From IMG/VR virus record IMGVR_UViG_3300033182_000980, positions 1 to 64,000 of that record: a stretch of DNA of 64,000 bases, one strand, 5' to 3'. A model generated the notes under the pieces. The model was not told where the DNA came from. It saw nothing but the letters and a program-made list of their open reading frames with translations, and made no database searches. Numbering within the stretch: the first letter of the stretch is position 1; every line of letters begins with the position of its first letter. Shown in pieces: positions 1,440 to 46,164 of this stretch. Position numbers and translations under genes: made by a program.

Positions 1440-1817
1440 ATGAGAAGAACAGCTAGTGAAATTATCAACGATCTTGAGCGTAGAGTTGCTCGTCTTGAAA
1501 GACAGGCAAGCCACTATAGTGGGTCCGAGACGAGTCTATATACTGGGATTAAAAAACTGCTTGGTCGCAAGTATAAAACCCTAAAAGATCTTAAGAGAGA
1601 TAATGAGATCATCAACCTCCATGAACTTCACTCTGACCGCTTTACATATAAAGGGATGGTTGAATGGGAAGAAGAGGGGCTTATCAATGTTGATATGGTC
1701 AATAAAGAATCGTACTTAACTGATCGTGGAGTTGAAAGGTATGAAGAGATGTTAAAATATGATGAAAAGGGCTATTTTGACCGCGAACCCCATACAGTAT
1801 TCACTTTTGGGTTTTAA
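1440..1817 (+). CDS. MRRTASE-leader family protein 1
   Basis: N-terminus MRRTASEIINDLERRVARLERQAS shared with four other ORFs; GGAG RBS. Confidence 0.8.
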   Translation: MRRTASEIINDLERRVARLERQASHYSGSETSLYTGIKKLLGRKYKTLKDLKRDNEIINLHELHSDRFTYKGMVEWEEEGLINVDMVNKESYLTDRGVERYEEMLKYDEKGYFDREPHTVFTFGF

Positions 1818-1831
1818 TCAATAAATCCTTT

Positions 1832-1872
1832 ATGATCTCCCTGTAAGTAAAAGACTTATAAAGGGAGATCAT
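1832..1872 (+). promoter_or_regulatory. RBS-sequestering hairpin upstream of 1874
   Basis: 11-bp inverted repeat ATGATCTCCCT/AGGGAGATCAT; 3' arm contains the SD; 5' arm overlaps a motif B variant at 1819-1833. Confidence 0.6.
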
Positions 1873-1873
1873 T

Positions 1874-3250
1874 ATGGCACAGCATGGCTGGTACGACAGT
1901 AGAAGTCCTTGGCCAGTACCACCAAGGAATACAAGTGCTGTCTCCCCTTTCGCTAAGGGTGAGATAGATGTGCATTGGGATAATCCATCAATCCTACATG
2001 GGAATGAGGGCTGGATTATTCGTGGTGTGAACATATATAGATCGGGCAACTCTGATCGTGGTCCTTATCGTAGAGTGAACATCACCCCGATTGGTGGGAC
2101 GATTTACAGAGATCGTATCGACACATGGGCTGTCAACGATGAGGTCATCACAGCCGACAAGTGGATTTCTAAAGGGGATCAAGGCGAAGATCCTTATCGC
2201 TTTGTAGTGGAGTATCCCATAGCTCGACAGAACAGCATCAATGATCCAGCAGATTCACCAAGAGATGTAGTGGTAATGATTAATGGTGTGATTGTTCCCA
2301 CAGCAAGAGTGCTTGGTGAGTTTGGTGAAGTGACTTTGTTCTATACAGGTAGAGCCAAGCCAGATGCGATCACTTTAACCGAAGATCGTTTACCACCACC
2401 TATAGATGATAACACAGTAGTGACTGTGAGCTACATTGCTTATGATCCAGAGAGTCGGTTGAGACTCGGTACAGATAAGAGAGATTTCTATCGGATAGCT
2501 ACAGTAGCAGAAGACCCAAAGACAGGTGCTTTATTAGAGACACCTTTAGAGCATTGTAAGCCATTCTCTGATCGTGAGCTTGAGCGTGTGGATTATATGT
2601 GGAGAGAAGGTATTCGTAGAAACAACTGGATACTCGAACAAGGGGGAGAGCGAGTTAAGTTATTCACTCGTAGGATCGCAGGTATCCCTTGCTACTGTAC
2701 CTCATTCAATAAAGAGACTCTTAAATACGCAAAGCAACCCGACAGCCTATGTGAGATTTGTTTCGGCACAGGCATAAAGGGTGGATATGATGGGCCTTAT
2801 GACATCATCATCGGTCCTAATGATGGAGAGCGTAGGATTTCTCAAGAAGATAGAGGTAGACGCAAGGAACATTCATACGAGGTATGGATAGGACCGAGTC
2901 CGATTGTGAGTCAGAAGGACTTTATCGTTAAGCCGAACAACGACAGGTATTCATGTGGAGCTGTTAATATGCCGTCCAATAGAGGTAATGTTCTCCAACA
3001 GCATTTCAACATAGCGTATCTCGATAGTGGAGACATACGATACAGATTCCCTATTGAGGGAGTTCCTGTTTCATGGCCAGAGACTCGTTATGGGTATTGG
3101 CCTCAAAGGGATACTTACACAGCTCGTGGAGATGCGATTTATCCTGTCACACCCGACAGTGCTTACCCTATGGACTCTGACAAGGCTACGGTATCCAATG
3201 CGTTGGAGAAGCGTGGTCGTACAGCGACTTGGGAGAACCAAAACTATTAA
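1874..3250 (+). CDS. Putative virion structural (neck/head-completion-like) protein
   Basis: 458 aa; Fn3-like N-terminus (VHWDNP..NIYRS); CxC..CxxCxGTG motif; motif B variant upstream; next to terminase. Confidence 0.4.
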   Translation: MAQHGWYDSRSPWPVPPRNTSAVSPFAKGEIDVHWDNPSILHGNEGWIIRGVNIYRSGNSDRGPYRRVNITPIGGTIYRDRIDTWAVNDEVITADKWISKGDQGEDPYRFVVEYPIARQNSINDPADSPRDVVVMINGVIVPTARVLGEFGEVTLFYTGRAKPDAITLTEDRLPPPIDDNTVVTVSYIAYDPESRLRLGTDKRDFYRIATVAEDPKTGALLETPLEHCKPFSDRELERVDYMWREGIRRNNWILEQGGERVKLFTRRIAGIPCYCTSFNKETLKYAKQPDSLCEICFGTGIKGGYDGPYDIIIGPNDGERRISQEDRGRRKEHSYEVWIGPSPIVSQKDFIVKPNNDRYSCGAVNMPSNRGNVLQQHFNIAYLDSGDIRYRFPIEGVPVSWPETRYGYWPQRDTYTARGDAIYPVTPDSAYPMDSDKATVSNALEKRGRTATWENQNY

Positions 3251-3254
3251 TAGT

Positions 3255-6200
3255 TCATTTCTTACCAAAGCGAGAATTGATTGAGTCTCTAAGGTTATAG
3301 CGTGGAGATTTAGGTGCAATCCTTTTAGCATCTGACCCACCTCGACCTGTATATCGACCACCTGTGGCAAAGGTTTTACCTCCTGCCATTGGGTGTCGGT
3401 ATTGCCTACTGCCTTTAGAACCAGAAGCAAAGTATCGACCTTTGCCGATGTTATTAGAGGCAAGCCATGTCATGCGTACAAGTGCGTCTGACATATCGTC
3501 ATGCTTACCTTTAGTCTGTGGAGCTTCGACTGTGATGAGGTGTTTACCATGCACCGTTTGCTGTAGCTCTAGGAGTTCTTGGATATAAGGCTCATGCCCT
3601 TCTGTCTCATAATTGGGGCGATTATATAGCTTGATTTTTTGATCCCACATCATGTCCTTAAAGTTTTGGTACATCTGTGAGGATAGCTGTTTAGTCATAT
3701 TGTGAGAGGTAAGATTTTTTAGACCTCGCTTCTCAAGTGCTTGTTGAAAGGGTATGCCAGCCCATTGGTCAAACATACCCTCTGTGATGTAGAACTTCTT
3801 TGTGTATTCTAGTACCCAATCAGCGACATCATCGAACTCTAATCGCTCTTTGTCTTGGTAGATCCCTTCACCAGCTTTGATTTGAGCCACGAGGTCTACC
3901 ACGATTTCTTCACCTTCGAGGTGTCCAATAGCGATAGCTGTACCGTCACCTACAAGACCCAAGTCGATTCCCATAAAGTGTGGCTTACGAGCAGGTGCTG
4001 ATCTCTGAGGTTTTAATTGAGGGTCTACACAAGATAAGAGGTCTTGTTCATCTGTGATCCACCCTCTTGTTCTGTCTGTAAACTCGCCACCATACTCTGT
4101 AAAGAACACAGCGGCGTTCTTGAGATAATGCTTCTCGAACTCTTGAGCAGGGACAGTTGGGTTTACTTCCCAAGTAGGTGCTTGAACAGCGAGAATGTTA
4201 TCGGCAGCCGCTCCACCACCCATACCGATTTGGAACAGGTTATAGAACAAGCCCTGTTTACCCAAAGGAGAAGAAATCAAGATAACCCGACCCTCCACCT
4301 CCCCAATAGGAACTGTAGGGTTGTTAGGATCTTTAGCTGAATACGCAGAGGTCGAAGGAACAACAGCGTTATACACTTCTTCTGCACCCGATTGACCCGA
4401 CTCTGTAAAGTGAGCAACCTCGTCAAGAATAACGCATATATTACCAGCACCACGAAGGCCCTTAGCTACACAAGACCTAAATGTAACCTTGAGTGTAGCT
4501 TTAGCAGAGGGATCTTCAATGTATCGACCGTACTTCTCAACATCAGCGGGTGTTTGGAAGCGAGCATAGGATAGGGTGTTATTCGCTGTATATGGTCCAA
4601 AGAAGGCACAGTTGCTTGTAGCGATGTTCCCCTCTAACACAAAGGAATGTGATCCAGGTACTGTGGCACAATATACTTTCTCAAAGCGAGAGGTGGGTTG
4701 AACATCAATAACCGTCCAAGAGCTTGTGTCTCGCTTAACTTGAGCGTGTTTGAGGAAAGACTCTTTGTGCTTAGGGATGATGAAGAATGACTCATCGAGC
4801 GTATGCTTCATCAAGCACATCTTATACATGGTGTGCGGCTTACCTGTTAGGTTTGAGACTCTATGATCCTCTCGGATGCTATAACAACCAATCCCTAAGA
4901 GATAACAGACATCACGAAATGCCTTAATGTTTTCAACAAAGGCACTTGTCATCACAACCTGTCCATTAGAAACAGATCCATCCGCCGCAAAGTATCCAGC
5001 AAGCCACCCTAAGAGGTATGACTTACATTCACTTAGATCGGGTATCTCTTTAAAGTGGTTTGGAGTTCCTGTGAATGATACACCCCCTTTGATTTCTTTA
5101 CGCTTACACATAGAGAAATAAGGCATGAGGGAGGAGTCTTTATCTCCAAAGAGGCAAACACCATTTACAGATCGTGGGTTTTTAGAGTTAGTTCCGTCAC
5201 CAAAAGTGAAGCCATGAGCAACCCCAAAAGGGGAAGGAGTGATGAGGTTCTTGTAGCTTTGACCATAGGTGGCTTGTAGATGATGTTTATTTGGTCTTAG
5301 TTCGTGAGTTTCAAACTCTTGGTAGCCTTTCCCTCTGTATCGCTTTCTGGCATCTCTAGCGAACCATTTATGATCTTTAGTGGCGTATATGGTTTTGAGG
5401 ACACCTTGTCTTTTAAGGGTGATCTTATAGAGCTGTTGTTCGCCAAAACATCGGACAGGTGCTTTGACCCAAGCACCCTCTCTCGTAAGCAAAGTAGGCT
5501 CTTGACCCTCTAGTTCTCCAAGTGTTTTGACACCTAGTGATGTAATGACCTCTGTCTCTGGAGCGAAGCAGTTGCGATAGTGTCCAGACACCTCTTGATA
5601 AAGCAGACCAGCTTGGTCTTTATCAGTCGCCACAGAGATGATTTGGATGTTATTGCTTTGAGGTAGTCCGTAGAACTTTTGTGGGTTTTCTTTTTTGATG
5701 AGCTTATAGGTTTCATAAGCGGCGATACACGCAGAAATCGTAGTGTTATGATTAGTGAACCCATTGCCGATGAACATTGCACCATTAGGCACATTGAGAT
5801 CAAAGACATGAGCTTCACGCTGTTCTACTTTAATGATAGGGTCAAAAAAGTAATCCAGATCAATGAGGTTATATAGTTGAGACTTTGTGGTTTGACTTAG
5901 ACCCTCATGGTCAGCGATCTTCTTGATCTTCCAATAGGGTGTATATTTAGTTGTAGGGCTTAGGTCATGTTTGAGATCGGGGTGGAACTTCTTGAGTCGT
6001 TCAGCATATTCATAGAAGAAGGGAACACCCTCATTAGACCCTCTATAAGAAACGCTCGACATTACACCCTCAAGGCATTTTTTCTTACGCTCTGATATGA
6101 ACCCTATATGTTGGTCAAAAAGTCGCTTAGACTTTGATCCTTTGAGTCTTACACGATACTCGGTTCGATCTTCCCGATTACTTTTGGAAAGGTTAGATGT

Positions 6201-7340
6201 GATGCCGAGATTAAGTAGGAGGAGTTGTGTCTCTCTTGCAAGCTCATAAGAGGCAGTTGAGAGCGTAATGGACTGTGCGTAAGCCGAACCATCAGTTTCA
6301 AACAAACCTCTTAGAAAAGCACAGACTACGCTTTTAGGGGATTGCATGATTGTATGTGGGATTTGCTTGGTAGTTGTCGTGCAATCAACAACCCAACCTA
6401 GATTATTAAGGAACTGTCTTATGTCCTTCCCATGAGCCGAGACTCTGCCAACATCTACTTTCCTCTTATCTGGATAATAAGAGACTTTACCAAACAAGTC
6501 TCTGAACAGACCCATTAAGTATTTCTCAAATGGCTTCTCTCCCACAGTGATCGTGATCGCCTTGTCATTAGTCCAATGTCCGTCCCCTGCGAGTAGACCT
6601 AGTAGTTCACCCCAACGCTCATCAAGGTATTTAGGTTGACCCTCGCTTGTATGGTGCTGGCTTATATCAACATATTCATTGGGCCAGAGTTGACTTGAAC
6701 GATTGATGCAAGCCACATCACCTTCTTCGATCTCTTCAAGGTACTTCCATTCGATCTTACATTCTGGAGTCATCACTTTGATACGATGATTTCCTGTACC
6801 CTCAATCCTGTACCCACAGAATGTCTCTAGGTACTTGGTGGGCTTGACCCCTCCATTATAAAAGTAAGCTGATCTTGAGTTTGCACCCGACTCTTGTGCG
6901 ACATTAACTTGTAAGGGTTGTATCTCTTCACCATTAGGGTCGCCTAAAGAGTCAATACGAACCATGCCCTTATTAGTAGGGATAAGGGTTTCACCTGTGA
7001 CACATTTACCAGACCTACGACCAATGGAGAGGATCATCTCTCGTCTTTGCTTGCCTGGTATAACTTCACCTATATTGCAACGACCTTCTTCATAGATTTT
7101 TCGCAGGTAAGATTTCTCGGTGTGAGTCTCTATTTTGGTTCTTGTCCAGTCCGAGATTTGAAAGGTCTTTTCGTCATCAAGCTCAAGACCATAGTGTGCT
7201 TTGAGGATAACTCTTTGCACAGGGAATAGGGTCATCTTCAAACCCCAAGATGCTTCTACGAACTCAATGATGTCTGCATCTTTCTCTGACTTTTTACCAG
7301 CTCTCGCACTCGCAGAGATCGCTACCGAGGATAAACTCAT
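3255..7340 (-). CDS. terL: Terminase large subunit with two inteins (mature ~621 aa)
   Basis: Walker A GRRSGK|TT, Walker B VILDEVAHF, ILISSP motif, RNase H-like nuclease FMGIDLG...HDDMSDA. Confidence 0.92.
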   Translation of the reverse strand: MSLSSVAISASARAGKKSEKDADIIEFVEASWGLKMTLFPVQRVILKAHYGLELDDEKTFQISDWTRTKIETHTEKSYLRKIYEEGRCNIGEVIPGKQRREMILSIGRRSGKCVTGETLIPTNKGMVRIDSLGDPNGEEIQPLQVNVAQESGANSRSAYFYNGGVKPTKYLETFCGYRIEGTGNHRIKVMTPECKIEWKYLEEIEEGDVACINRSSQLWPNEYVDISQHHTSEGQPKYLDERWGELLGLLAGDGHWTNDKAITITVGEKPFEKYLMGLFRDLFGKVSYYPDKRKVDVGRVSAHGKDIRQFLNNLGWVVDCTTTTKQIPHTIMQSPKSVVCAFLRGLFETDGSAYAQSITLSTASYELARETQLLLLNLGITSNLSKSNREDRTEYRVRLKGSKSKRLFDQHIGFISERKKKCLEGVMSSVSYRGSNEGVPFFYEYAERLKKFHPDLKHDLSPTTKYTPYWKIKKIADHEGLSQTTKSQLYNLIDLDYFFDPIIKVEQREAHVFDLNVPNGAMFIGNGFTNHNTTISACIAAYETYKLIKKENPQKFYGLPQSNNIQIISVATDKDQAGLLYQEVSGHYRNCFAPETEVITSLGVKTLGELEGQEPTLLTREGAWVKAPVRCFGEQQLYKITLKRQGVLKTIYATKDHKWFARDARKRYRGKGYQEFETHELRPNKHHLQATYGQSYKNLITPSPFGVAHGFTFGDGTNSKNPRSVNGVCLFGDKDSSLMPYFSMCKRKEIKGGVSFTGTPNHFKEIPDLSECKSYLLGWLAGYFAADGSVSNGQVVMTSAFVENIKAFRDVCYLLGIGCYSIREDHRVSNLTGKPHTMYKMCLMKHTLDESFFIIPKHKESFLKHAQVKRDTSSWTVIDVQPTSRFEKVYCATVPGSHSFVLEGNIATSNCAFFGPYTANNTLSYARFQTPADVEKYGRYIEDPSAKATLKVTFRSCVAKGLRGAGNICVILDEVAHFTESGQSGAEEVYNAVVPSTSAYSAKDPNNPTVPIGEVEGRVILISSPLGKQGLFYNLFQIGMGGGAAADNILAVQAPTWEVNPTVPAQEFEKHYLKNAAVFFTEYGGEFTDRTRGWITDEQDLLSCVDPQLKPQRSAPARKPHFMGIDLGLVGDGTAIAIGHLEGEEIVVDLVAQIKAGEGIYQDKERLEFDDVADWVLEYTKKFYITEGMFDQWAGIPFQQALEKRGLKNLTSHNMTKQLSSQMYQNFKDMMWDQKIKLYNRPNYETEGHEPYIQELLELQQTVHGKHLITVEAPQTKGKHDDMSDALVRMTWLASNNIGKGRYFASGSKGSRQYRHPMAGGKTFATGGRYTGRGGSDAKRIAPKSPRYNLRDSINSRFGKK
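4611..5570 (-). mobile_element. Intein 2 (320 aa, LAGLIDADG) in terminase
   Basis: Starts CFAPETEVIT, block B ATKDHKW, ends GNIATSN|C; HGFTFGDG and LAGYFAADG blocks. Confidence 0.9.
5745..7004 (-). mobile_element. Intein 1 (420 aa, LAGLIDADG) in the terminase Walker A
   Basis: Starts CVTGETLI, ends GFTNHN|T; LLGLLAGDG and FLRGLFETDG blocks. Confidence 0.92.
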
Positions 7341-8725: not shown

Positions 8726-11338
8726 TTAAACTTCAAATCCACCAAAGAGAACATCACCTAACTCTTCATGTGAGGGTGCATCATCAACAGACACATCTTC
8801 GCTTGCTGTTAAGTTGAACTCGTTAGCATCATAGTTATTAACGAATAGTGACGCTGTTTGCTCACTATCACTTGCGTTCGCCAATCGGATCATCTCTTGC
8901 TGATAAGAATGAGGACTCTCAACGATCTCATCTGCCGAAGCGATGATTGGCTTATTGTACTTCTGACAAGATCCTCCAGAGTTGAACACGCATGAACCAC
9001 ACTTAGATGTCTTGAGGAGTGTAGGGATTTGATTAGCTCTATGAACTAATGCACCCTTATCACAACCCTCAACACCATTGGTCATGTATGCTGATGCGTC
9101 TACATAAGCATGACCAGATAGACCCTCATGCTCTGCTCTGATGGAGGCAATCCTTGAGCTGTACTCATTGACTACATTTTGATTAAATCGTGTAGCGATC
9201 AATACATCTAACTCTTCACCAGCCGCACCCTCACTCATTTTTTGCCTTACCCATGTGGCAACCTTCTTCTCGGTTGCTGTCATGGCATTTGATTTCTTGT
9301 TGCCAAGAATGTGAGCTGTTTGTTCTCCTTGATACCGAGTAGCGTCAGTTGGTTTAGAAGCGAGGTCAAATGCTTTGCGTACAAAGTCGTTAGGGTCTTT
9401 GATGTTTTTGACCCGATCATAATCCTCTTGGGAAAGGAGTCCAGACTTGAGGAGCTTGTCTACTTTAGCATGAGACTCTTTCCATAAGTTTGCACTCGCC
9501 ATCTTTTGTCTACTGGGGAGAGCTTCAATGGTCATCTTTCTGCTTTTGACCATACGATGTTCTTTGACATCATATTGGTTGTATGTCTCAACTCTCTTTG
9601 GTTTTGAGATGTGTCTTAATACAGAGGACACCTTTTGTTCGGGTGTCTTACCCTTAGCTACCTTCTGTACTTCCTCCACAGAAATCAATCCGGAGTTAAC
9701 TAACTTAGAGATTTGAACCATTGCCGATTTTTGACGAGACTCTAGTTCACGACTACTCTTTTGGGGCACATGGGCGTTAGCGTCCATCTGATGCTTACGC
9801 ATATTGTGATAGGAAGCGTTCTTACCTTGACCCTCATAAGTTGAGGACAGACTCTCAATGTTCTTAGCGATATGATCGAATACGGCTTTAACCTTACCTT
9901 CTGGAGATTCGTGTCGTGAGGTGATAGTGGATGCTTCTTTAGCTGTGATCATCCCTGCCTTAACAATACGACCAATCTTATCTTTAGCCGAAGCGAAGCG
10001 TTGTTCGAGGTTCAGTTCAGAACGAGTCTTAAAGTTTTCCTCGATTTTGCTCTTATGTGGGGTGTGGGCTTTAACTCCCATACCTTGACCTTGGTAAGAA
10101 CCTGATTCACTTGGTGTGCTCGCTAACTCATAGAGGCGTTCGATCTTCTTTGAAGCCGTTCTGTTGGATTCAACGACAGCGGATACTTGCTCCTCATCAA
10201 GAAATCCTTGATTGACAAGCTGACTTGCGATCCGATTGAGCTTCATCTCAATCTTTGATTGCTCAACATCCTCGGAGGAAGCGACAAAGATGTTTTCTTC
10301 TCTGGCGTTCTCTAGTTCTCTACGAGCATGGTCTAGGGAGATAAGGCTGGATTGATCGAGCTGAGTCGGAAACCATGTTGCAGATTTCTCTTGTCTATCT
10401 ACACGACCCTCAATGAGATCAATAAAGGCAGTCTGTAAACGAGCCTTAGCAGATCCAGATGCGAGGCGTACCCCATAAGACTCTAGCTTAGGGAGTAAGT
10501 TCTTAGCGGCTCTGTTCCAAGGTACTTCATTAACGACTTCCATACCTAAGAAGCGATCAAAGGCACAGTCTTTATTCTTAGGGATGATGTACATGGCTGT
10601 GGCACAACGCTTGTTGATGACCTCATCCCACCGACCATTGAACAGACCAGGGAAGTGTTCTTCTTTAATGTAGACACGACCATGTAGACCATACTCGGAA
10701 GCGAGCTTGGATTTGACCTCTAGGACTTGTGATTCATCAACCTCTGACAAGACTACATTCATAGGGTGTCCATAAGCGAGCTTACGGATGTTACGCTCCA
10801 TCTCTTCCCTATAGTCATCACCAGGTAGTTGAGACTGTTCGTCTGTGTAGTTGTTTTTATAAGGTGCGTGATACCTATTCTCATTCGGAATGATGTCAAG
10901 ACCTGTAGTGCTAGTCTGACCCCATGACTGCTCAAGAGATTTAAGCTGATTGTTCGATGGGTTATTCATGTGGCCTTCAGCGAGGTCTTTATAGACCTGC
11001 TCTAGTTCGGCAGTTCCGCTAAGGTCGGGTTCGGGCTGAGAAGCGAGCCATGAATGATCTACTAAAGTCACATCTTGAGTTGCTTCACGAGTGATCTCAC
11101 CCATATTAAGATCAGCTTGATGCTCTACACCATCGGGGAGCATTGAGATGCCCGAACTATCGAGGGGAATCATCCCACTAGGAAGATCAGCTAAACCTCT
11201 TGCTTCGGGGAGTCGGGCTTTCTCTTGAGGACCGCCACCGTATTCGGTGTCGAAATGAAAACCATCCATCATGTAGTTTGACCCTTGAGTAAGGGTATAT
11301 CCACCATTAGGCATATAGCTTTTGTTCTTACTACTCAT
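8726..11338 (-). CDS. Large probable virion protein with internal repeats and Cys-rich C-terminus
   Basis: 870 aa; four related L..G.(I/L)...E units, mostly followed by Y.G(Q/E); CGSC..C cluster. Confidence 0.6.
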   Translation of the reverse strand: MSSKNKSYMPNGGYTLTQGSNYMMDGFHFDTEYGGGPQEKARLPEARGLADLPSGMIPLDSSGISMLPDGVEHQADLNMGEITREATQDVTLVDHSWLASQPEPDLSGTAELEQVYKDLAEGHMNNPSNNQLKSLEQSWGQTSTTGLDIIPNENRYHAPYKNNYTDEQSQLPGDDYREEMERNIRKLAYGHPMNVVLSEVDESQVLEVKSKLASEYGLHGRVYIKEEHFPGLFNGRWDEVINKRCATAMYIIPKNKDCAFDRFLGMEVVNEVPWNRAAKNLLPKLESYGVRLASGSAKARLQTAFIDLIEGRVDRQEKSATWFPTQLDQSSLISLDHARRELENAREENIFVASSEDVEQSKIEMKLNRIASQLVNQGFLDEEQVSAVVESNRTASKKIERLYELASTPSESGSYQGQGMGVKAHTPHKSKIEENFKTRSELNLEQRFASAKDKIGRIVKAGMITAKEASTITSRHESPEGKVKAVFDHIAKNIESLSSTYEGQGKNASYHNMRKHQMDANAHVPQKSSRELESRQKSAMVQISKLVNSGLISVEEVQKVAKGKTPEQKVSSVLRHISKPKRVETYNQYDVKEHRMVKSRKMTIEALPSRQKMASANLWKESHAKVDKLLKSGLLSQEDYDRVKNIKDPNDFVRKAFDLASKPTDATRYQGEQTAHILGNKKSNAMTATEKKVATWVRQKMSEGAAGEELDVLIATRFNQNVVNEYSSRIASIRAEHEGLSGHAYVDASAYMTNGVEGCDKGALVHRANQIPTLLKTSKCGSCVFNSGGSCQKYNKPIIASADEIVESPHSYQQEMIRLANASDSEQTASLFVNNYDANEFNLTASEDVSVDDAPSHEELGDVLFGGFEV

Positions 11339-16629: not shown

Positions 16630-17121
16630 TTACCTTTCTTTTTCATCAACCCAATAATCAACAAAGTATTTGAGTTGATCTTTGGTTATGCCTTTTATTT
16701 TTAGTTCAGCTTTAGCAATGCCATTTTCTTCACGAAAACGATCAAAATCTTCGTCTTTAAAGTAATCTACCTGATATGGATTTCCATCTGCATAGTAAAA
16801 GTAGATAGTGTCTCTGTTGTTATCATCTTCGTAGACCAAATCACCAAAATTCTCCATAAGGTCATCAGCAATGGATACTAGAGCCTCTGCAACGGCACTA
16901 TCCCTGTCATAGCCTTTACCTTTCTCATCGTACCTTATTTCCTCTTTGGCAATAACCCTGTCATTCTTATCGAGAATGATGTCTGTAAAGGTGTATGAGA
17001 GAGTGTGGGTGTAAGCGTCCCAGTCCAAGTCTCTGCTCCAGTCTGTGCGAGATGCTTGCCTCTCAAGGCGATCAATCCGAGTTTCAAGATCACGAATGAT
17101 CTCTGTTGCTGTTCTTCTCAT
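16630..17121 (-). CDS. MRRTASE-leader family protein 2
   Basis: MRRTATEIIRDLETRIDRLERQAS followed by an acidic domain. Confidence 0.8.
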   Translation of the reverse strand: MRRTATEIIRDLETRIDRLERQASRTDWSRDLDWDAYTHTLSYTFTDIILDKNDRVIAKEEIRYDEKGKGYDRDSAVAEALVSIADDLMENFGDLVYEDDNNRDTIYFYYADGNPYQVDYFKDEDFDRFREENGIAKAELKIKGITKDQLKYFVDYWVDEKER

Positions 17122-17132: not shown

Positions 17133-17483
17133 CTATTGGTTCACTCTAAGTTTAGAGCGTTTATTAGATGATGTGTTGACAGTTTTAGGGAGGTGATTGT
17201 TACCCATATTGATCCGAGTACCCATTGCCTTCTGAAACTTATCCTCTACGATCTGGGGGTAGTCTTTGGGCTTGGTGCTAAAGGCATAGATTTCGTTGAG
17301 TCGATACTGCTCTTCCTCGGTCATTCCAGGAAGGAGCTTCAAGAAATCGTCTCTTGCTTTCTGATTGTCGTTCGATAGGAACTCTAAGATCAAGTAAGCA
17401 GGGAGTACAGGCATATTGGTGGGGTCATCTTCCACACCCTTAAGAGTGTTTTCACCATTGGGTCTTATCCAAAAGTTTTCCAT
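17133..17483 (-). CDS. Hypothetical protein
   Basis: 116 aa; GAGGAG RBS in an imperfect hairpin; motif B at 17514-17529. Confidence 0.6.
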   Translation of the reverse strand: MENFWIRPNGENTLKGVEDDPTNMPVLPAYLILEFLSNDNQKARDDFLKLLPGMTEEEQYRLNEIYAFSTKPKDYPQIVEDKFQKAMGTRINMGNNHLPKTVNTSSNKRSKLRVNQ

Positions 17484-17542
17484 AACAATCTCCTCTCTTT
17501 TAAGTGGGGATTGTATAAAGGAACTATTAAAGGAGGTGTCTT

Positions 17543-17908: not shown

Positions 17909-18481
17909 TTGAAGAAAAAGCTCCTAGAGGGTATAGATGCCTCTTTTGACCATTTTGTAATGCAACACCTAGACTCATACTCGAAAGTCTCCCTAAGCCA
18001 AGATAAAGACGCTCAAATAAGATCGTTCGTTAAATCGGTGATAGAGAAGAAGCGAGCCGAGGGTGGTCAATACTTTAAAGACCCAGAGTCATTAGCTAAG
18101 AGGTATCTAACAGGTTGGGGAGGGGAGTGTGCTGTTGAGAAATACATAGGAAAGCCTTTTGTGGACTTCACGATAGGAGACTCACACGACTACTATGTAC
18201 CCGACTTGAGATCGGCAGGGTATGAGGTAGGGGTAAAGACGGTCAACATGGGAGACTTCCCTCTATTGAGGAAGCCCACACCAAGTTCATCAAACACACC
18301 TCAGATTATCGTGATACGAGAGTCGAGGTACGATTTCTACATCTGTGGTTTGGCTACCTATGATGTAGTAAATGACCCCTCAAACTTTTCGCAGTTATTG
18401 GTGCGTAGTGGAGGGGTCTTAGAGGTCGGGGTCAAGTCAGCGTTTTATCGCTTTGACTTGCTCACCCCTCTTACATCTTAG
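17909..18481 (+). CDS. Possible PD-(D/E)xK-type nuclease
   Basis: GECAV...VPDL....VGVKT spacing resembles the restriction-endonuclease fold. Confidence 0.35.
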   Translation: MKKKLLEGIDASFDHFVMQHLDSYSKVSLSQDKDAQIRSFVKSVIEKKRAEGGQYFKDPESLAKRYLTGWGGECAVEKYIGKPFVDFTIGDSHDYYVPDLRSAGYEVGVKTVNMGDFPLLRKPTPSSSNTPQIIVIRESRYDFYICGLATYDVVNDPSNFSQLLVRSGGVLEVGVKSAFYRFDLLTPLTS

Positions 18482-19013
18482 CAAGTTCGCTTGGGCTATA
18501 TGCGAGGAAGTTCTCGTCCCATTCTTTACGAGGATCATCCTCAAAAGGAGGCATATCTGGTCCTGCGTAAGCTGTGATAAGACCTTGCCTACCACCACCT
18601 GCTGGAACGATGATAAGGGTAAGGATGTTAGTAGCCCTCATTGGTCGAGGACGACTGATAAGACGCTGTGGAGGGCGGCCTTCACCACGAGACTTGAAGA
18701 AAAACTCCTCATCTCTCATGTCGATGCGATCTCCCATTTTCTTACCCCAAAGACGAGTCTCGCCTCGGAAGCCAGGTACTTTGAGAGAGGTAGCACCGTT
18801 AGGCATACCCATATCTTCCCACATCTCAAAAGCCTTAGCGAGAGACTTAGCGTCAAACTCTTTAGCGTGGGTTTTAAAGTGAGTTGAAAGAAGCTCGATG
18901 TCATTGCGAGCAAGGAAGTCCTCAACAACCGAGTCTACTGACCCTGCTTGTCTTTCAAGACGGGCAACTCGTTGCTCAAGGCTTCTGATTACTTCTGATG
19001 CTGTTCTTCTCAT
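18471..19013 (-). CDS. MRRTASE-leader family protein 3
   Basis: MRRTASEVIRSLEQRVARLERQAG. Confidence 0.8.
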   Translation of the reverse strand: MRRTASEVIRSLEQRVARLERQAGSVDSVVEDFLARNDIELLSTHFKTHAKEFDAKSLAKAFEMWEDMGMPNGATSLKVPGFRGETRLWGKKMGDRIDMRDEEFFFKSRGEGRPPQRLISRPRPMRATNILTLIIVPAGGGRQGLITAYAGPDMPPFEDDPRKEWDENFLAYSPSELAKM

Positions 19014-19087
19014 AGTGAGATCTCCTTATTGGGGTTGTGGGTGTAAGAACAATAAATGGCTTCAATAAACAATCTACAAATAAGGGG

Positions 19088-24205: not shown

Positions 24206-24519
24206 TGGTCATCCTTTGTATCAAATTGTTTGAAGAAATTTGACCCATCACACTTTATATTATTTGTTAAGATGAAGTTAGCTGGCCACCTACCTTTTTC
24301 TTTATACATCTGTATGTCAGATCCAACTTGAGCTACATGACCCGACCAACCTTTTTCTCTAGGGTCTGCTTTCTGTATTTGTCTCGCTTCAAAGTTGATG
24401 CTTTCGTCATCACCAAAAGAAACTCTTAAAGCATCAATATTGATAGCCCCACAACCATGTTTAAGGGTGTTCTCAGCCACACTTCCCTCTAGGGGTTTTC
24501 TCAGTAATGTAATGATCAT
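24202..24519 (-). CDS. Methyltransferase variable-region cassette A (short)
   Basis: MIITLLRKPLEGSVAENTLKHGCGAINID...GRWPANF...FFKQF. Confidence 0.75.
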   Translation of the reverse strand: MIITLLRKPLEGSVAENTLKHGCGAINIDALRVSFGDDESINFEARQIQKADPREKGWSGHVAQVGSDIQMYKEKGRWPANFILTNNIKCDGSNFFKQFDTKDDQ

Positions 24520-25895
24520 CTCTTGCTCCGAATCACATGACCCACAGAACCAATCGTGGTAGCTATGGATATGGATTTGTCTAACAACTCAATCATCCTA
24601 CCGACAGGGAATGGTTCGTATAACTCTTTTATGCCCCAAACGCTTGAGTCATTCTCGGCAGTACCAAGATTATGGCAGACCACTTTGAATGGTGCTTTCA
24701 ACGCTCTGTCCAGATACTCATTGCCTGTCTCGATGTTGTAGAGCGTAGGGATAGCACCTTTGACATAGCCATTCACCTTTGCGTCCATCATAGAAATCAA
24801 CGCTTTCTCGGCAAGTACCCTTCTCCACCTTGCTTCGGCTTCGGTTGCCCCACCTACTCGTAAACGAACTAGAGTGCCATTGAGGGCATTAGCTCTTTTG
24901 CGTAGTAGGTCTTGTGTATGAGGGTGAGGACAAGTCTCTGCTTCTCTAAGAAGTTCATCTACTCGGTCTGCTGTCTTATCTACATGGTCATCATAAGGGT
25001 CTACAATCATCTCACCATAGTTGAGGACTGTGTTAATCGCAGAACCGTAGAACTCTGGTACAAACTTTTCGTATTTCTGATCGACCACAGTTGCCCCTGT
25101 AAACGAAGCAAAGTCATCTAGCCACCCTTTACCCCAAATCACTCTAGGGGCATCACAAGCGTACACTTCAAGCGTTCCCTTATGATTGTTCATTTTGATT
25201 GCTTGTAGGGCTTTACCCCCAACCATTGGAGCGATAATAACTAATGGCCTACCTTCAAACGATCCCATATACTCCATAGCGTTGAGTATATGATCTACTT
25301 CAAATACTGGACGACTAAACAGAGCGAACATTGGACCTTTGAGGTATGCTTCTTTGTCATGGTGTACTTTTAAAGAAGCGTGGAAGGACTCGGTTTCGAC
25401 TACCTCACACCCATTGCCTTCCCATTTTTCAAGAGAGACATGAGAAGATAAAGATCCAGCGAGATAGATTGCTTCGGAGATTTTATCAATGGACTCCTCA
25501 TCAAGCTCACTTTGCAGTCCGATTTCTTTTAGGATGTCTTGGTTAGACTCAAATCGAGGCACAGCATCTACGGCTATATTTACAGCTCGCTTCACCTGCT
25601 CTGTAATAAGAGGGTGTACCTCACCATAATGTCGGTGAAAGGATCTCAAGAGAGATATGGCTATGAACGCACCCCACTTACAACCGTCACCAGATTTACA
25701 GAGTTCTAATAAGGAGGTCTGTATAATTCTAGCGTAGGGTTCTGGTCGGTACGCATTGATGATGGACTTAGCCGAGAGGTTATTCCAAATCTTGTTGTTG
25801 CGAGAGAGTAGGACTGTTCCTCCATTACTCGCATGGCTCAAAACTAAAAGTGATGATAGTTCATTTATTGTAGGTATAAATAAAGATAACGACAT
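24516..25895 (-). CDS. Divergent GroEL-like chaperonin
   Basis: GDG motif, RPLVIIA, AP..G...LDD.A..TGA, L.KR...L.G....RVGGATEAE. Confidence 0.75.
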   Translation of the reverse strand: MSLSLFIPTINELSSLLVLSHASNGGTVLLSRNNKIWNNLSAKSIINAYRPEPYARIIQTSLLELCKSGDGCKWGAFIAISLLRSFHRHYGEVHPLITEQVKRAVNIAVDAVPRFESNQDILKEIGLQSELDEESIDKISEAIYLAGSLSSHVSLEKWEGNGCEVVETESFHASLKVHHDKEAYLKGPMFALFSRPVFEVDHILNAMEYMGSFEGRPLVIIAPMVGGKALQAIKMNNHKGTLEVYACDAPRVIWGKGWLDDFASFTGATVVDQKYEKFVPEFYGSAINTVLNYGEMIVDPYDDHVDKTADRVDELLREAETCPHPHTQDLLRKRANALNGTLVRLRVGGATEAEARWRRVLAEKALISMMDAKVNGYVKGAIPTLYNIETGNEYLDRALKAPFKVVCHNLGTAENDSSVWGIKELYEPFPVGRMIELLDKSISIATTIGSVGHVIRSKR

Positions 25896-33887: not shown

Positions 33888-33970
33888 GTGGGGCTACCTC
33901 CTTTTCATAGTTTATTTATACCTCCCGATAGGCATGAACCATTCAACAATCTCATTTAAAGGAGATGACC

Positions 33971-34507
33971 ATGAGAAGAACCGCATCAGAAGTAGTTAGA
34001 AATCTTGAGATGAGGATCGCTCGTCTTGAAAGACAAGCATCTGGCACTGTTGAATATGACGAGTACGGTCGTACTGTCGAGTACGACATTGATTATTCAT
34101 ATCGACCAGATGTCAAAGACTCTAGGAAATATGTAGAGAAGATTCTCAAAGAGGTCAGCCTCGAATTCCTAGATACCCATGAAGAACCTTTTAGCAAAGA
34201 TCTTGCTGAGTTTGAATGGGAATATAGGGGTATGGAATCAGTAAAAGATCAGCTTTACCTTGTTTACTCCATCTATGCTTTTGGCAGTGAGAAATCCGAG
34301 TCCACTTATCGTTCAGGCTTTCCTCGTGATACAGAGGCTCATCATGTTGGGCTTATTGTGCCGATTGACTGGGGTACAGGAGATGTTGATGCTGAATGGG
34401 AGGACATTGAAAATTTCTTAAAGAAATCAGTCTTAAGAGATAAGACTGCTTTTTCTTACAAGAAGCTAGATGAAGTCGTAAGGCGGTCGAAGAAGTATTA
34501 CCGATAG
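33971..34507 (+). CDS. MRRTASE-leader family protein 4
   Basis: MRRTASEVVRNLEMRIARLERQAS; motif B at 33906-33920. Confidence 0.8.
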   Translation: MRRTASEVVRNLEMRIARLERQASGTVEYDEYGRTVEYDIDYSYRPDVKDSRKYVEKILKEVSLEFLDTHEEPFSKDLAEFEWEYRGMESVKDQLYLVYSIYAFGSEKSESTYRSGFPRDTEAHHVGLIVPIDWGTGDVDAEWEDIENFLKKSVLRDKTAFSYKKLDEVVRRSKKYYR

Positions 34508-41967: not shown

Positions 41968-42026
41968 CGTGTTCTCCTTTGGGTTTAAAATCCACACATA
42001 CAAAGGAATGATAAATGATCTACAAA

Positions 42027-42278
42027 TCAGTCCTCTATGATGTATCCCTGCTTCCTTAGCTTGATCGTTAGGTGTGCAAGTTTGATCGGGTCGTTGGAGC
42101 TGATCACAATCTTGTGGTCCTCTATGATGCTTACATCCCAATCTTCTCTTTGAAGGTTGCGTATAAACTTCTCCCCGAAAGGATACTCTTGAGGGTGGAT
42201 CGTGATGTCATAGTTTTGAGTCATCACTTCGGCTACCCATCTCTTTACAATATCTTTGGGTAAGATCTTGTCCGTCAT
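42027..42278 (-). CDS. Hypothetical protein
   Basis: 83 aa, coupled to the upstream ORF. Confidence 0.55.
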   Translation of the reverse strand: MTDKILPKDIVKRWVAEVMTQNYDITIHPQEYPFGEKFIRNLQREDWDVSIIEDHKIVISSNDPIKLAHLTIKLRKQGYIIED

Positions 42279-42841: not shown

Positions 42842-42842
42842 T

Positions 42843-43367: not shown

Positions 43368-43389
43368 CTCACAGTAAAAAAGAATGGTA

Positions 43390-44583: not shown

Positions 44584-44681
44584 CTTCTCTCCTCTCGTAT
44601 AGGGTACACATACCCTTATACTATTTCGGAAGTAAATGGACTCGGTATCATTCATATAAAGGGAATGGGAGAAAAGACACC

Positions 44682-45803
44682 ATGCAAGTTAAAATAGAAA
44701 ACTACCAATCTATCAAACACGCTGAGTTTGAGGTCAAAGGTCTGACTGTCATTACAGGACCGAACAACACAGGCAAGTCTGCTTGTGCTAGAGCTATCGC
44801 TGGTGCTTTCTCTAACGCTAGAGGTTATTCCCATGTTCGCAAAGGTGAGCGTTTCTCAAAGGTGTCAATCGACTTTGATGATGGCAACTCGGTCATTTGG
44901 GAAAAGGGTAAAGGGGTCAACAAGTATGAGATCAACGGACAAAAGCTAGATAAAGTTGGATCAAAGACTCCCGATGAGCTTGCCGACTTAAACATTATAT
45001 CAGTAGATGTTGATGGAAAAACAGTATGGCCTCAGATCGCCCGACAGTTTGAACAAATCTTCTTGCTTGATATGCCCCCTAGTGTCCTCTCTAGTGCGTT
45101 ATCTGATGTCAAGACAATAGAAGCCTTAGAGAAAGCCTCAAGTCTCTCTAGGAGCGAAACTAAGAGCCTTAATCAACGCATTAAGGTTAAGCATGAGGAT
45201 TTAGAGTATGAGCGTAAGCGATTACCTAATTTCAATGAGCTGTCAGACGCAGAGACTACTATCAATCATATAAATGATCTTGAGGGGTCGATTAAGACCC
45301 TTGAAGAAAGAGTTAAAAAGCTAGAGGCAATCAAAGAAAAGAGAGAAAACCTTATGTTTCAAACACAGTTCGTATCTGCCTTGCAAAATGTAAACTTTCC
45401 ACAGGTCAATCCACATGACTTCATGGGGATCAAAGACCTTGAGCGTATTCGTAGAGAAAAGAACCGACTAAGGATCATGGAAGGTATCGTGGGTGTCGGC
45501 TTAACATCATTCCCCTCTTTGCCCGATGTTGATGTCAAAGACCACGCACCACTTGAGCGAGTCTTGAATAAGCGTAAAGAGCTTGACCAAACAATCAAGT
45601 CAATCTCAATGCTAGAGGTTGATCTGCCAGAGGTAGATACAAGCATTGAGAATGACCTTAGAATAGCCTCGGAACGCTTTGATTTATATCAGCGTATATC
45701 TCGCACCGAACAAGAGGTAGAAAGGCTCACAGACGAGCTTGAGGCGATTAAGTGCGAGATTGGTGATACTTGCCCTTTGTGTGAGCAAGGGATCGACCAC
45801 TAG
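44682..45803 (+). CDS. Rad50/SbcC-like ATPase, N-terminal half ending at the zinc hook
   Basis: IENYQS, GLTVITGPNNTGKS, Q-loop, coiled coil, terminal CPLCEQ; no ABC signature or Walker B. Confidence 0.8.
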   Translation: MQVKIENYQSIKHAEFEVKGLTVITGPNNTGKSACARAIAGAFSNARGYSHVRKGERFSKVSIDFDDGNSVIWEKGKGVNKYEINGQKLDKVGSKTPDELADLNIISVDVDGKTVWPQIARQFEQIFLLDMPPSVLSSALSDVKTIEALEKASSLSRSETKSLNQRIKVKHEDLEYERKRLPNFNELSDAETTINHINDLEGSIKTLEERVKKLEAIKEKRENLMFQTQFVSALQNVNFPQVNPHDFMGIKDLERIRREKNRLRIMEGIVGVGLTSFPSLPDVDVKDHAPLERVLNKRKELDQTIKSISMLEVDLPEVDTSIENDLRIASERFDLYQRISRTEQEVERLTDELEAIKCEIGDTCPLCEQGIDH

Positions 45804-45828
45804 CCGAGCTGTCTCACCGAAATCTTAT

Positions 45829-46164
45829 CTAAAAGATCGAGTATTCCGCCCCATATACTAAGTAGATGCAAACATAAGCGATCTCTCCAGAAATACGAGT
45901 ACAAGGCACTTTTATTTCTGTGGCATCATCCCCATAACCTACCCAGAGCTTGATGTTTGTAGTATCCGCATCACACCCAAACTCCCTCTTGATGCAAGAT
46001 GCTATACCTCTTGAGGTAAGCTCACATTTAACTTTTTTATATGGACTAACGGCATCTCCGTCTGCGTTAAAAGCTCTGACTGACATGGATGAAGCTGTTT
46101 TGCCCTCAAGTCGGGCAATACGAGTCTCAAGATTTCTAATTACTTCTGAAGCTGATCTTCTCAT
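45829..46164 (-). CDS. MRRTASE-leader family protein 5
   Basis: MRRSASEVIRNLETRIARLEGKTAS; GGAG RBS before 46164. Confidence 0.8.
   Translation of the reverse strand: MRRSASEVIRNLETRIARLEGKTASSMSVRAFNADGDAVSPYKKVKCELTSRGIASCIKREFGCDADTTNIKLWVGYGDDATEIKVPCTRISGEIAYVCIYLVYGAEYSIF

What the first reader, a model, noticed from the sequence alone, without database searches (positions are those of the whole stretch)
1440..46164. Shared ~24-aa leader on five unrelated dispersed proteins: candidate capsid-targeting tag
Seen: ORFs at 1440(+), 17121(-), 19013(-), 33971(+) and 46164(-) all start MRR(T/S)A(S/T)E(I/V)(I/V)xxLExR(V/I)xRLE(RQ/GKT)A, then diverge completely. Two share the exact DNA GGAGATCTCACTATGAGAAGAACAGCA. 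All lie downstream of motif B or a variant, most at operon junctions. The scaffold has similar amphipathic segments (NARVARLADNA, NARLARKVRKLADNA, QRLAKIERLAEA). Known: T4 internal proteins share a short capsid-targeting sequence removed by the prohead protease. Inference: a portable promoter-RBS-leader module that loads varied cargo into the prohead via the scaffold for injection into the host.
Basis: partly seen in the sequence, partly recalled or inferred. Interest (0 to 1): 0.85.

Follow-up and report, generated by a model that had tools for sequence, protein, structure and literature searches.

The report
Shared address tag on phage proteins
A lineage of uncultivated marine giant phages puts the same 24-residue helical tag on more than a thousand unrelated small proteins, most likely to load them into the forming capsid for delivery with the DNA, but this function has not been tested.

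Summary
Five intact ORFs start with a near-identical leader (consensus MRRTASEVIRxLExRVARLERQAS) and have unrelated bodies.

The window is bases 1-64000 of a 375,691-bp IMG/VR phage contig that carries at least 17 such genes. A leader profile finds 1060 cluster representatives (50% identity) among 1.84 billion proteins, nearly all at residue 1. It finds none in 185,579 bacterial or archaeal genomes, and none in 50,697 deposited phage genomes at the sensitivity reached. Cargo is almost all ORFan, small and soluble.

Synonymous codon variation at invariant residues shows selection on the peptide. About 71% of leader genes have a TAGTTTATTTAT-type motif 41-52 nt upstream. In the window the same motif precedes the capsid, head-module, terminase and endolysin operons.

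New here: the tetrapeptide [RK]-x-A-S is enriched in head-module proteins, at conserved positions of the putative prohead protease and the scaffold. It also occurs at leader residues 3-6 and, more loosely, at the leader/cargo junction.

Best reading (about 0.5): a T4-CTS-like prohead-loading tag trimmed by the prohead protease. The proposed leader-scaffold mimicry is not supported. No virion, expression or cleavage data exist.

The parts
1440..1817 (+). Leader-cargo gene 1 (125 aa). The leader is codons 1-24 (1440-1511).
   Evidence: Translation; leader HMM 57.1 bits; weak PHROG hit only.
16630..17121 (-). Leader-cargo gene 2 (163 aa). The leader is 17050-17121. It is the second gene of an operon that starts at 17483.
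   Evidence: HMM 52.3 bits; shares an exact 27-nt RBS-to-codon-5 string with gene 3.
18471..19013 (-). Leader-cargo gene 3 (180 aa). The leader is 18942-19013. The cargo is conserved at 82-96% identity in 10 metagenomic homologues.
   Evidence: AF2 predicts a helix at residues 5-22 in a poor model, pLDDT 53.6. The ESM Atlas look-alikes are RNase A-like, EndoU and DUF3228 clusters; this is a lead only.
33971..34507 (+). Leader-cargo gene 4 (178 aa). The leader is 33971-34042.
   Evidence: HMM 57.4 bits; no match in deposited phage genomes.
45829..46164 (-). Leader-cargo gene 5 (111 aa). The leader is 46093-46164. It lies in the variable spot downstream of the capsid gene, where close relatives carry 1-3 leader genes.
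   Evidence: HMM 48.7 bits; the hot spot is seen in L127, L128, L165 and others.
1381..1395 (+). Promoter-like motif B; it ends 44 nt before the ATG at 1440.
33905..33919 (+). Promoter-like motif B (1 mismatch); it ends 51 nt before the ATG at 33971.
19065..19078 (-). Motif B variant (TGTAGATTGTTTAT); it ends 51 nt before the ATG at 19013.
46214..46224 (-). Truncated motif B variant (TAATAGTTTAT). It overlaps the stop codon of the upstream gene and ends 49 nt before the ATG at 46164.
17515..17529 (-). Motif B in front of the operon 17483 to 15198, which contains leader gene 2.
52134..53582 (-). Putative prohead (head maturation) protease, 482 aa. It has conserved R25-x-A-S and K289-A-A-S sites.
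   Evidence: phrog_18299, E 4.9e-14. 38% identity, E 8e-55, to Tunturi_5 gp331, which is annotated as head maturation protease. Site conservation in 16 homologues. No Pfam or PDB hit and a poor AF2 model.
50555..52096 (-). Scaffold-like acidic protein, 513 aa. It has EF-hand motifs, three Arg/Ala/Leu helices, [RK]-x-A-S sites at 126, 466 and 489, and an invariant C-terminal tail.
53586..57101 (-). Head-module protein of 1171 aa. Its N-terminus is a leader-like helix followed by S-R-Y-A-S (residues 24-28).
57108..58142 (-). First gene of the head-module operon (344 aa); it carries K-M-A-S and R-K-A-S sites.
48887..49765 (-). Major capsid protein (HK97 fold family), 292 aa.
   Evidence: phrog_2522, E 2e-51. 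Identity is 89% to LR745208.1, 46% to Tunturi_5 and 38% to phage G gp27.
50525..50539 (-). Exact motif B in front of the decoration and capsid operon.
58186..58200 (-). Motif B in front of the operon that holds the 344-aa, 1171-aa, protease and scaffold genes.

Best explanation
The 24-residue leader is a portable sorting tag, analogous to the T4 capsid-targeting sequence, used by one lineage of marine huge phages.

Its middle (residues 7-20) is an amphipathic, heptad-patterned helix: I9, L12, V16 and L19 fall at a/d positions. I infer that this helix docks newly made late proteins onto a component of the assembling prohead core. The candidates are the scaffold, the 1171-aa head-module protein, or the protease itself.

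The helix is bracketed by two copies of a tetrapeptide, R3-(T/S)-A5-S6 and (R/K)21-Q-(A/S)23-x. The same tetrapeptide recurs at conserved positions of the putative prohead protease and the scaffold. I infer that these are maturation-protease sites, so that the tag is trimmed inside the prohead and the freed cargo stays with the DNA and enters the next host.

Shown: the tag, its scale, peptide-level selection, the promoter motif shared with head genes, and the motif enrichment. Inferred: docking, cleavage, packaging and injection.
For: 1. Same leader, unrelated cargo. Five occur in the window and at least 17 on the 375,691-bp contig.
2. Scale. 1060 representatives at 50% identity reach E<=1e-3 among 1.84e9 proteins, and nearly all matches start at residue 1. 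190 leader proteins fall into 144 cargo groups. Pfam hits 2 of 150 and PHROGs almost none.
3. Peptide-level selection. Invariant A5, S6, R15, R18 and E20 use 2-6 synonymous codons each, including both TCA and AGT for S6.
4. Restricted to phage and metagenome DNA. 0 hits in GTDB species genomes. Every leader-bearing contig that holds the protease gene has one at least 58% identical to the window's.
5. Co-regulation proxy. 82 of 116 distinct leader genes have the promoter-like motif 41-52 nt upstream, against 1.8% of random windows. In the window the motif precedes the capsid, head-module, terminase and endolysin operons, and not the PhoH, clamp-loader, SbcC-like or methyltransferase genes.
6. 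A variable cluster of 1-3 leader genes lies just downstream of the capsid gene in relatives.
7. [RK]-x-A-S enrichment. 14 copies in 3010 aa of head-module proteins against 8 in 8529 aa of other proteins: Fisher p 0.0002, shuffle mean 2.1, 0 of 300 shuffles reach the observed count, and permuted control motifs are flat.
8. The sites are conserved. The protease has R25-x-A and K289-x-A invariant in 16 homologues down to 44% identity. Scaffolds carry A-R-Q-A-S and R-E-A-S about 35 and 23 residues before an invariant C-terminal tail.
9. The leader carries the motif at residues 3-6 in 287 of 296 proteins. A strict copy at the junction occurs in 123 of 296, against 2.4% background.
10. In two-domain proteins the C-terminal leader core (R-[VI]-A-R-L-E-[KR]-Q-[AS]) recurs between domains, as expected for a processing or docking motif.
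11. Cargo is small (median 124 aa), soluble (5 of 295 with a TM-like segment) and hypervariable, like T4 internal proteins (PMC3012670).
Against: - There are no virion proteomics, transcript timing or cleavage data. No cultured phage carries the leader.
- The protease assignment rests on a PHROG annotation, on homology to an annotated but untested Tunturi_5 gene, and on synteny. There is no Pfam or PDB hit and the AF2 model is unusable.
- The leader has no detectable similarity to the scaffold by HMM, and there is no covariation with the scaffold helix.
- The junction site is loose: 173 of 296 proteins lack a strict [RK]-x-A-[SG] there.
- The best-conserved copy, at residues 3-6, would remove only five residues if cut.
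- A few proteins carry the leader internally or at the C-terminus. That is unlike a classical N-terminal propeptide.
- R-x-x-S also fits a basophilic kinase site.
- The late-promoter label is an inference from gene content.
Confidence: 0.5

Rival explanations
1. The leader is a docking or oligomerisation helix for a common partner that has nothing to do with the capsid. The partner could be a host hub such as RNA polymerase, the ribosome or a Clp unfoldase. It could also be the phage's own GroEL-like chaperonin, or another intracellular compartment or assembly. In this reading many accessory effectors plug into one machine.
For: - The helix has a heptad pattern with charged flanks.
- The tag works in more than one position: internal and C-terminal copies exist.
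- Some cargo looks like DNA-binding domains (WGR; wHTH-like segments).
- No significant similarity to the scaffold.
Against: - It does not explain the [RK]-x-A-S link to the protease and scaffold.
- It does not explain the promoter motif shared with head genes.
- It does not explain the leader-gene hot spot beside the capsid gene.
- 2.5 heptads are short for an autonomous coiled coil.
Confidence: 0.2
2. The leader is a regulatory pro-peptide or degron. It keeps potentially toxic late effectors inactive, or marks them for timed turnover, until a phage protease cuts at [RK]-x-A-S or a kinase phosphorylates the Ser. The cargo is not packaged.
For: - The motif is shared with protease substrates.
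- One cargo resembles RNase-type toxin domains; this is a language-model lead only.
- R-x-x-S fits basophilic kinases (my own knowledge).
Against: - 144 or more unrelated cargo groups are unlikely all to need the same inhibitory helix.
- AF2 places the helix apart from the body, but the model is poor.
- Prohead proteases normally act inside proheads (PMC5694885).
Confidence: 0.12
3. The conservation is at the nucleic-acid level. A mobile promoter, RBS and 5' coding cassette would be spread by recombination, or would act as an mRNA element, and the peptide would be incidental.
For: - Two genes share an exact 27-nt string.
- Close relatives share long 5'UTR stretches.
- AGA is strongly preferred at codons 2-3, and CTT at L12 and L19.
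Against: - Invariant residues are encoded by many synonymous codons.
- Family-wide, only the promoter core and the RBS are conserved upstream.
- There is no Rfam match.
- Recombination at the cassette may still help shuffle cargo, but that does not explain the peptide conservation.
Confidence: 0.03
4. The five genes are ordinary paralogues whose bodies have diverged beyond recognition.
For: Tandem leader genes occur.
Against: - There is no cargo similarity.
- Cargo lengths run from 4 to 413 aa and two different Pfam domains were detected (WGR, DUF2958).
- Within one orthologous group the cargo is 82-96% identical while the first half of the leader can diverge.
Confidence: 0.02

Closest known systems
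T4 capsid-targeting sequence (CTS) of internal proteins IPI-III and Alt
   Same: Both are short N-terminal peptides shared by otherwise unrelated, hypervariable small proteins. The T4 CTS directs them into the scaffolding core, and the prohead protease then removes it. The cargo is injected with the DNA and counters host defence (PMC3012670, PMC5694885).
   Different: - No sequence similarity to the T4 CTS.
- 24 residues rather than 10-20.
- No L/I-x-E site; the candidate site here is [RK]-x-A-S.
- At least 17 genes are dispersed over the genome, not gathered in one IP locus.
- More than 1000 cargo families.
- Function is untested.
Propeptides of phiKZ / SPN3US / 201phi2-1 inner-body and ejection proteins
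   Same: Giant phages in which many head-internal proteins carry N-terminal propeptides. A prohead protease cuts these at a short motif, often at several sites, and the protease also cuts itself (PMC5694885).
   Different: - Those propeptides are mostly more than 100 residues long and are specific to each paralogue family.
- Their motif is (S/A/G)-x-E.
- The capsid, protease and scaffold lineage here is a different one, related to phage G and Tunturi_5.
Herpesvirus assemblin and HK97-type scaffold release sites (my own knowledge)
   Same: The maturation protease cuts itself, and cuts the scaffold about 25 residues from the capsid-binding C-terminus, at a small-residue pair (Ala-Ser in herpesviruses). 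Here R-E-A-S and R-Q-A-S lie 23 and 35 residues before an invariant scaffold tail.
   Different: A basic residue at P3 instead of a hydrophobic one. Cleavage has not been demonstrated. The fold of the protease could not be confirmed.
Encapsulin cargo-loading peptides and microcompartment encapsulation peptides (my own knowledge)
   Same: A short terminal peptide or amphipathic helix plus a linker that sorts diverse cargo into a protein shell.
   Different: - Those peptides bind the shell protein directly and are not removed.
- Here the shell-binding tail appears to belong to the scaffold, and it differs from the leader.
- Those systems are in cellular genomes, whereas this leader is absent from the 185,579 GTDB species genomes scanned.
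T4-type mobile regulatory cassettes (promoter-stem-loop modules that mediate gene shuffling; my own knowledge)
   Same: Repeated promoter-proximal sequences flank hypervariable accessory genes and could serve as recombination points. An example here is the 27-nt identity between two leader genes.
   Different: Here the conserved unit is mainly a translated peptide.

Membership tests
T4-type capsid-targeting sequence | A short N-terminal peptide shared by otherwise unrelated proteins of one phage | tested here: met
T4-type capsid-targeting sequence | Sequence related to the T4 CTS and ending in the gp21 site L/I-x-E | tested here: not met
   By inspection of the consensus, no L/I-x-E arrangement exists. 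The Glu residues sit in A-S-E, x-L-E and R-L-E. The relation is therefore an analogue, not a homologue.
T4-type capsid-targeting sequence | Removed by the prohead protease | tested here: inconclusive
   The candidate motif [RK]-x-A-S is shared with conserved sites in the putative protease and the scaffold. There are no cleavage data.
T4-type capsid-targeting sequence | Cargo present inside proheads and virions and ejected | not testable with these tools
   No cultured representative was found.
T4-type capsid-targeting sequence | Made at the time of head assembly | tested here: inconclusive
   The promoter-like motif is shared with the capsid and head-module operons. There are no transcript data.
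Tat (twin-arginine) signal peptide | An RR motif followed by a hydrophobic h-region and an A-x-A site | tested here: not met
   RR is present, but residues 7-24 are charged and amphipathic with no hydrophobic stretch.
phiKZ-like head propeptides | An (S/A/G)-x-E cleavage motif and homology to a gp175-type protease | tested here: inconclusive
   A5-S6-E7 fits A-x-E by inspection. The protease shows no detectable relation to solved or Pfam families.
Ordinary paralogue family | Homology beyond the N-terminus | tested here: not met
RiPP-type leader peptide | A short core peptide after the leader, and a nearby modifying enzyme | tested here: not met
   Cargo has a median of 124 aa and appears globular. 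The genes are dispersed, and no modifying enzyme recurred among the annotated neighbours; neighbours were not screened systematically.

The most novel reading that the evidence does not exclude
The leader is a general protein address label of a huge-phage lineage, with 17 or more cargo genes per genome and over 1000 cargo families. It would act through a previously unknown sorting route. One possibility is a high-capacity loading system that ships a large, fast-evolving arsenal of effectors with the DNA. Another is import into a non-capsid compartment. Either way it would be read by a new [RK]-x-A-S-specific maturation protease.
Probability: 0.2. Interest if true: 0.9.

Novelty: new variant of a known kind. 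Interest (0 to 1): 0.78.

Why it matters
If the tag loads cargo into capsids, each of these phages ships a dozen or more hypervariable proteins into the host together with its DNA. The metagenomic pool would then hold more than a thousand candidate first-minute effectors, such as anti-defence or host-takeover factors. All of them could be found with a 24-residue profile.

It would extend the T4 internal-protein idea to an unrelated huge-phage lineage related to phage G and Tunturi_5. It would define a new maturation-protease motif. It would also provide a natural, short encapsidation tag for a very large capsid.

Even if the target is not the capsid, a single sorting peptide on so many unrelated ORFans makes them jointly testable.

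Tried and rejected
- Megablast of 25 kb, and tblastn of the leader and of one leader protein, against 50,697 phage records found nothing. The 25-aa query may have been masked by the low-complexity filter, so absence there is only shown for near-identical leaders.
- Pfam, PHROGs and NCBIfam on the five proteins gave nothing usable.
- A literature search for the leader string found no relevant paper. Jumbo-phage reviews and the phage G multi-omics paper do not mention such a leader.
- AF2 of leader gene 3 (pLDDT 53.6) and of the protease (pLDDT 50) was too poor for fold searches, so none were run.
- Sequence and profile searches of the protease against the PDB and Pfam gave no hit.
- The leader HMM against the scaffold gave no significant hit; the best was 6.6 bits, in L136. 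I rejected the mimicry idea for this reason and for the lack of covariation.
- A word-based search for leaderless homologues of cargo 3 found only the close, tagged family.
- An ESM Atlas query with the leader alone was uninformative.
- No tRNA and no Rfam family in the window.
- The portal of LR745208.1 has no match in the window, so the portal gene lies elsewhere.
- The nine [RK]-x-A-S copies in the 870-aa protein (8726-11338) lie mostly in internal repeats. I left them out of the enrichment test.
Full report
**1. Observation**

Each begins with the same 24 residues (consensus MRRTASEVIRxLExRVARLERQAS) and they then diverge.
- A six-frame regular-expression scan finds exactly these five in the window.
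- A profile built from 64 leaders scores them 48.7-60.7 bits. The next best ORF in the window scores 5.5 bits.
- The quoted 27-nt string occurs exactly twice, in front of and into the genes at 17121 and 19013, with none expected by chance.
- BLASTP of the parts after the leader gives nothing better than E=0.03 in a five-sequence database.

So this is a shared leader on unrelated bodies, not chance and not a paralogue family.

**2. What the window is**

It is contig positions 1-64000 of IMGVR_UViG_3300033182_000980, 375,691 bp.

It is phage DNA with these identifiable genes:
- a large terminase ORF with insertions, PhoH, a GroEL-like chaperonin, an amidase-type endolysin, a clamp loader and an SbcC-like nuclease;
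- a head module.

The capsid protein is 89% identical to that of uncultured phage LR745208.1 (485 kb), 46% to Tunturiibacter phage Tunturi_5 (309 kb) and 38% to Bacillus phage G gp27.

The gene order is: 344-aa protein, 1171-aa protein, 482-aa protein, acidic 513-aa protein, 208-aa protein, capsid protein. This matches the order protease, unnamed 528-aa protein, small protein, major head protein in Tunturi_5. The 482-aa protein is 38% identical (E 8e-55) to the Tunturi_5 gene annotated as head maturation protease, and it hits phrog_18299. That assignment is annotation-level only. Pfam, the PDB and AF2 gave nothing.

**3. Scale of the leader**

- Searching residues 1-40 of gene 3 against 5.8 billion proteins returned 76 hits. 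About 65 had a near-identical leader followed by unrelated sequence. They come from contigs of up to 369 kb in JGI, ENA and Logan data.
- The leader profile, run against 1.84 billion representatives at 50% identity, found 1060 with E<=1e-3 and 66 with E<=1e-10. Almost all matches start at residue 1.
- 190 leader proteins fall into 144 cargo groups at BLASTP 1e-3.
- Of 150 scanned, only two have a Pfam domain (WGR, DUF2958). PHROGs recognises almost none.
It found none in 185,579 GTDB species genomes.
- The window's own contig carries at least 17 leader genes, spread over its whole length.
- One homologue of cargo 3 comes from a Tara Oceans sample, so the lineage is at least partly marine.
- Every leader-bearing contig that also holds the protease gene has a protease at least 58% identical to the window's.
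- A sub-clade at 76% identity uses a variant leader (MRHLTASQKIAxLExR[IL]ARLE...).

**4. Level of selection**

Among 113 distinct leader DNAs, invariant residues use many synonymous codons:
- A5 uses four codons;
- S6 uses both TCA and AGT;
- R15 uses six;
- R18 uses six;
- E20 uses two.

The peptide is therefore what is conserved. Codons 2-3 are almost always AGA, and L12 and L19 almost always CTT. This may reflect codon bias or translation initiation. The sample is partly shaped by the search pattern.

**5. Expression signals**

In the window it lies 25-60 nt upstream of the starts of:
- the decoration and capsid operon, where the leader is longer;
- the head-module operon;
- the operon ending in the terminase;
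- the amidase gene;
- several unknown genes.

It is not found before the PhoH, clamp-loader, SbcC-like or methyltransferase genes.

Four of the five leader genes have the motif or a variant ending 44-51 nt before the ATG. The fifth is second in an operon behind one.

Across IMG/VR, 82 of 116 distinct leader genes have such a motif 41-52 nt upstream, against 1.8% of random 90-nt windows, and 100 of 116 have a GGAG-type RBS. More distant contigs use their own variant (TTTTCATTTAT...). Family-wide, only the promoter core and the RBS are conserved upstream, so this is not a rigid DNA cassette. That these are late promoters is an inference from gene content.

**6. Anatomy of the tag**

- AF2 predicts a helix over residues 5-22 (the model is poor overall).
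- Hydrophobic residues fall at a/d heptad positions (I9, L12, V16, L19), with Arg and Glu on the flanks.
- Conservation stops after residue 23-24.
- The next ten residues are mildly enriched in Ser, Thr and Pro.
- Cargo is small (median 124 aa), has a median net charge of zero, and only 5 of 295 have a TM-like segment.
- In the one well-populated orthologous group, the cargo is 82-96% identical while the first half of the leader can diverge. One member has MRQSSPLNQKLRSLHNRIAKLERQAG. The tag is therefore not part of the cargo fold.
- In about 15 two-domain proteins the last ten residues of the leader (R-[VI]-A-R-L-E-[KR]-Q-[AS]-x) recur between the domains. A few proteins carry the tag internally or at the C-terminus. 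The C-terminal half thus behaves as a short linear motif that works away from the N-terminus.

**7. A link to the head module found here**

I took the leader/cargo junction as a candidate site ([RK]-x-A-[SG]) and counted it in the window's proteins.

| Protein | Observed | Expected from shuffles | Fraction of 500 shuffles reaching the observed count |
|---|---|---|---|
| Putative protease (482 aa) | 5 | 0.59 | 0 |
| Scaffold (513 aa) | 4 | 0.94 | 0.012 |
| 344-aa head-module protein | 3 | 0.42 | 0.004 |

It is not enriched in 14 non-head proteins.

Pooled counts for [RK]-x-A-S are 14 in 3010 aa of head-module proteins against 8 in 8529 aa of other proteins. Fisher p is 0.0002, no shuffle in 300 reaches the observed count, and five permuted control motifs are flat.

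The sites are conserved:
- In 16 protease homologues down to 44% identity, R25-x-A27 and K289-x-A291 are invariant. They flank the conserved N-terminal domain.
- Scaffolds of many clades carry G-[RK]-x-A-S near residue 126.
- Scaffolds also carry A-R-Q-A-S and R-E-A-S about 35 and 23 residues before an invariant C-terminal tail (..DELSKLWESAPDVSKFFG).
- The 1171-aa protein starts with a leader-like helix (LLLELQRELEKTDRLLLEA) followed by S-R-Y-A-S. This is conserved in close relatives.

The leader itself has R3-[TS]-A5-S6 in 287 of 296 proteins. A strict [RK]-x-A-[SG] at or just after residue 21 occurs in 123 of 296, against 2.4% background. When the spacing after R-L-E varies, the motif moves with it.

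The simplest reading is a shared maturation-protease site. This would resemble the self-cleavage and scaffold-release sites of herpesvirus and phage assemblin-type proteases (my own knowledge). A basophilic kinase site is an alternative.

**8. What is not supported**

- The leader HMM does not detect the scaffold.
- The corresponding scaffold helix reads RVARLADNA, KIQRIASDF or KLARLSEED in different leader-bearing clades, while the leader's RVARLE does not change.

The docking partner, if there is one, is unknown.

**9. Mechanism and comparison**

I commit, at about 0.5, to a prohead-loading tag that works like the T4 capsid-targeting sequence.
- The helix docks late-made cargo to the assembling core.
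- The prohead protease trims the tag at [RK]-x-A-S.
- The cargo stays in the head and enters the next host.

T4 internal proteins are described as a highly diverse set of defence-countering proteins sharing only a conserved CTS (PMC3012670). The CTS is 10-20 residues long and is removed by gp21 (PMC5694885).

This leader is not a homologue of the T4 CTS. It has no sequence relation, no L/I-x-E site, and belongs to a different capsid lineage. It also differs in scale and in being dispersed over the genome.

The rivals are:
- a docking helix for a non-capsid hub (0.2);
- a regulatory pro-peptide or degron (0.12);
- a nucleic-acid-level cassette (0.03);
- diverged paralogues (0.02).

**10. Novelty**

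No paper in the searchable library contains the leader string or describes such a leader in huge phages. Pfam, NCBIfam and PHROGs have no model for it. I rate it a new variant of a known kind.

Noticed in passing
window 50555-52096 (-): The scaffold-like protein contains EF-hand calcium-binding motifs (Pfam EF-hand_5, E 1e-7). A paired D-x-D-G-D-G motif is visible in homologues down to about 44% protease identity. A calcium-binding scaffold would be unusual.
   Followed up: partly
window 50555-50630 (-) and homologues in L126-L253: The last ~18 residues of the scaffold (DELSKLWESAPDVSKFFG) are nearly invariant across clades whose proteases are only 44% identical. This is probably the capsid-binding tail.
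   Followed up: partly
window 53586-54100 and 54145-54159 (-): A motif B copy and an in-frame ATG lie inside the 1171-aa ORF, just before its C-terminal zinc-ribbon domain. That domain is a separate gene in relatives (L136 7457-7996; LR745208.1 locus L001 13758-14339). It may therefore also be made on its own here.
   Followed up: partly
window 3255-7340 (-): The terminase large-subunit ORF is 1361 aa. Terminase matches are split (residues 497-577 and 1075-1241), with an endonuclease-like region at 246-408. This suggests intein or other insertions.
   Followed up: no
window 47474-48385 (-): A LAGLIDADG homing endonuclease gene sits just downstream of the capsid gene.
   Followed up: no
window 18471-18935 (-): The cargo of leader gene 3 has ESM Atlas look-alikes among CdiA-CT RNase A-like, EndoU and DUF3228 clusters (scores 0.84-0.94). 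There is no sequence-level support.
   Followed up: partly
window 8726-11338 (-): An 870-aa protein in the late operon upstream of the terminase is built of repeated helical units. Each unit starts with an R-x-A-S-like motif, and there are nine copies.
   Followed up: partly
window 46222-46758 (-): A 178-aa protein with a signal-peptide-like N-terminus lies between the capsid region and leader gene 5.
   Followed up: no
L046 (IMGVR_UViG_3300025707_000006), 445-aa ORF on the - strand: One ORF contains three leader copies, at the N-terminus and at residues ~167 and ~314. The later copies lack the Met. It looks like a fusion of tagged units or a polyprotein.
   Followed up: no
L001 13116-13751 and 15210-15875; L148, L153, L161, L162 upstream of the protease: Distant clades lack the leader near the head module. 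Instead they carry paralogous head-module proteins that share a different N-terminal segment (..KKGA..VT..LD..A.LFQ..).
   Followed up: no
window 24516-25895 (-): A GroEL-like chaperonin gene (phrog_5725, E 1e-21).
   Followed up: no
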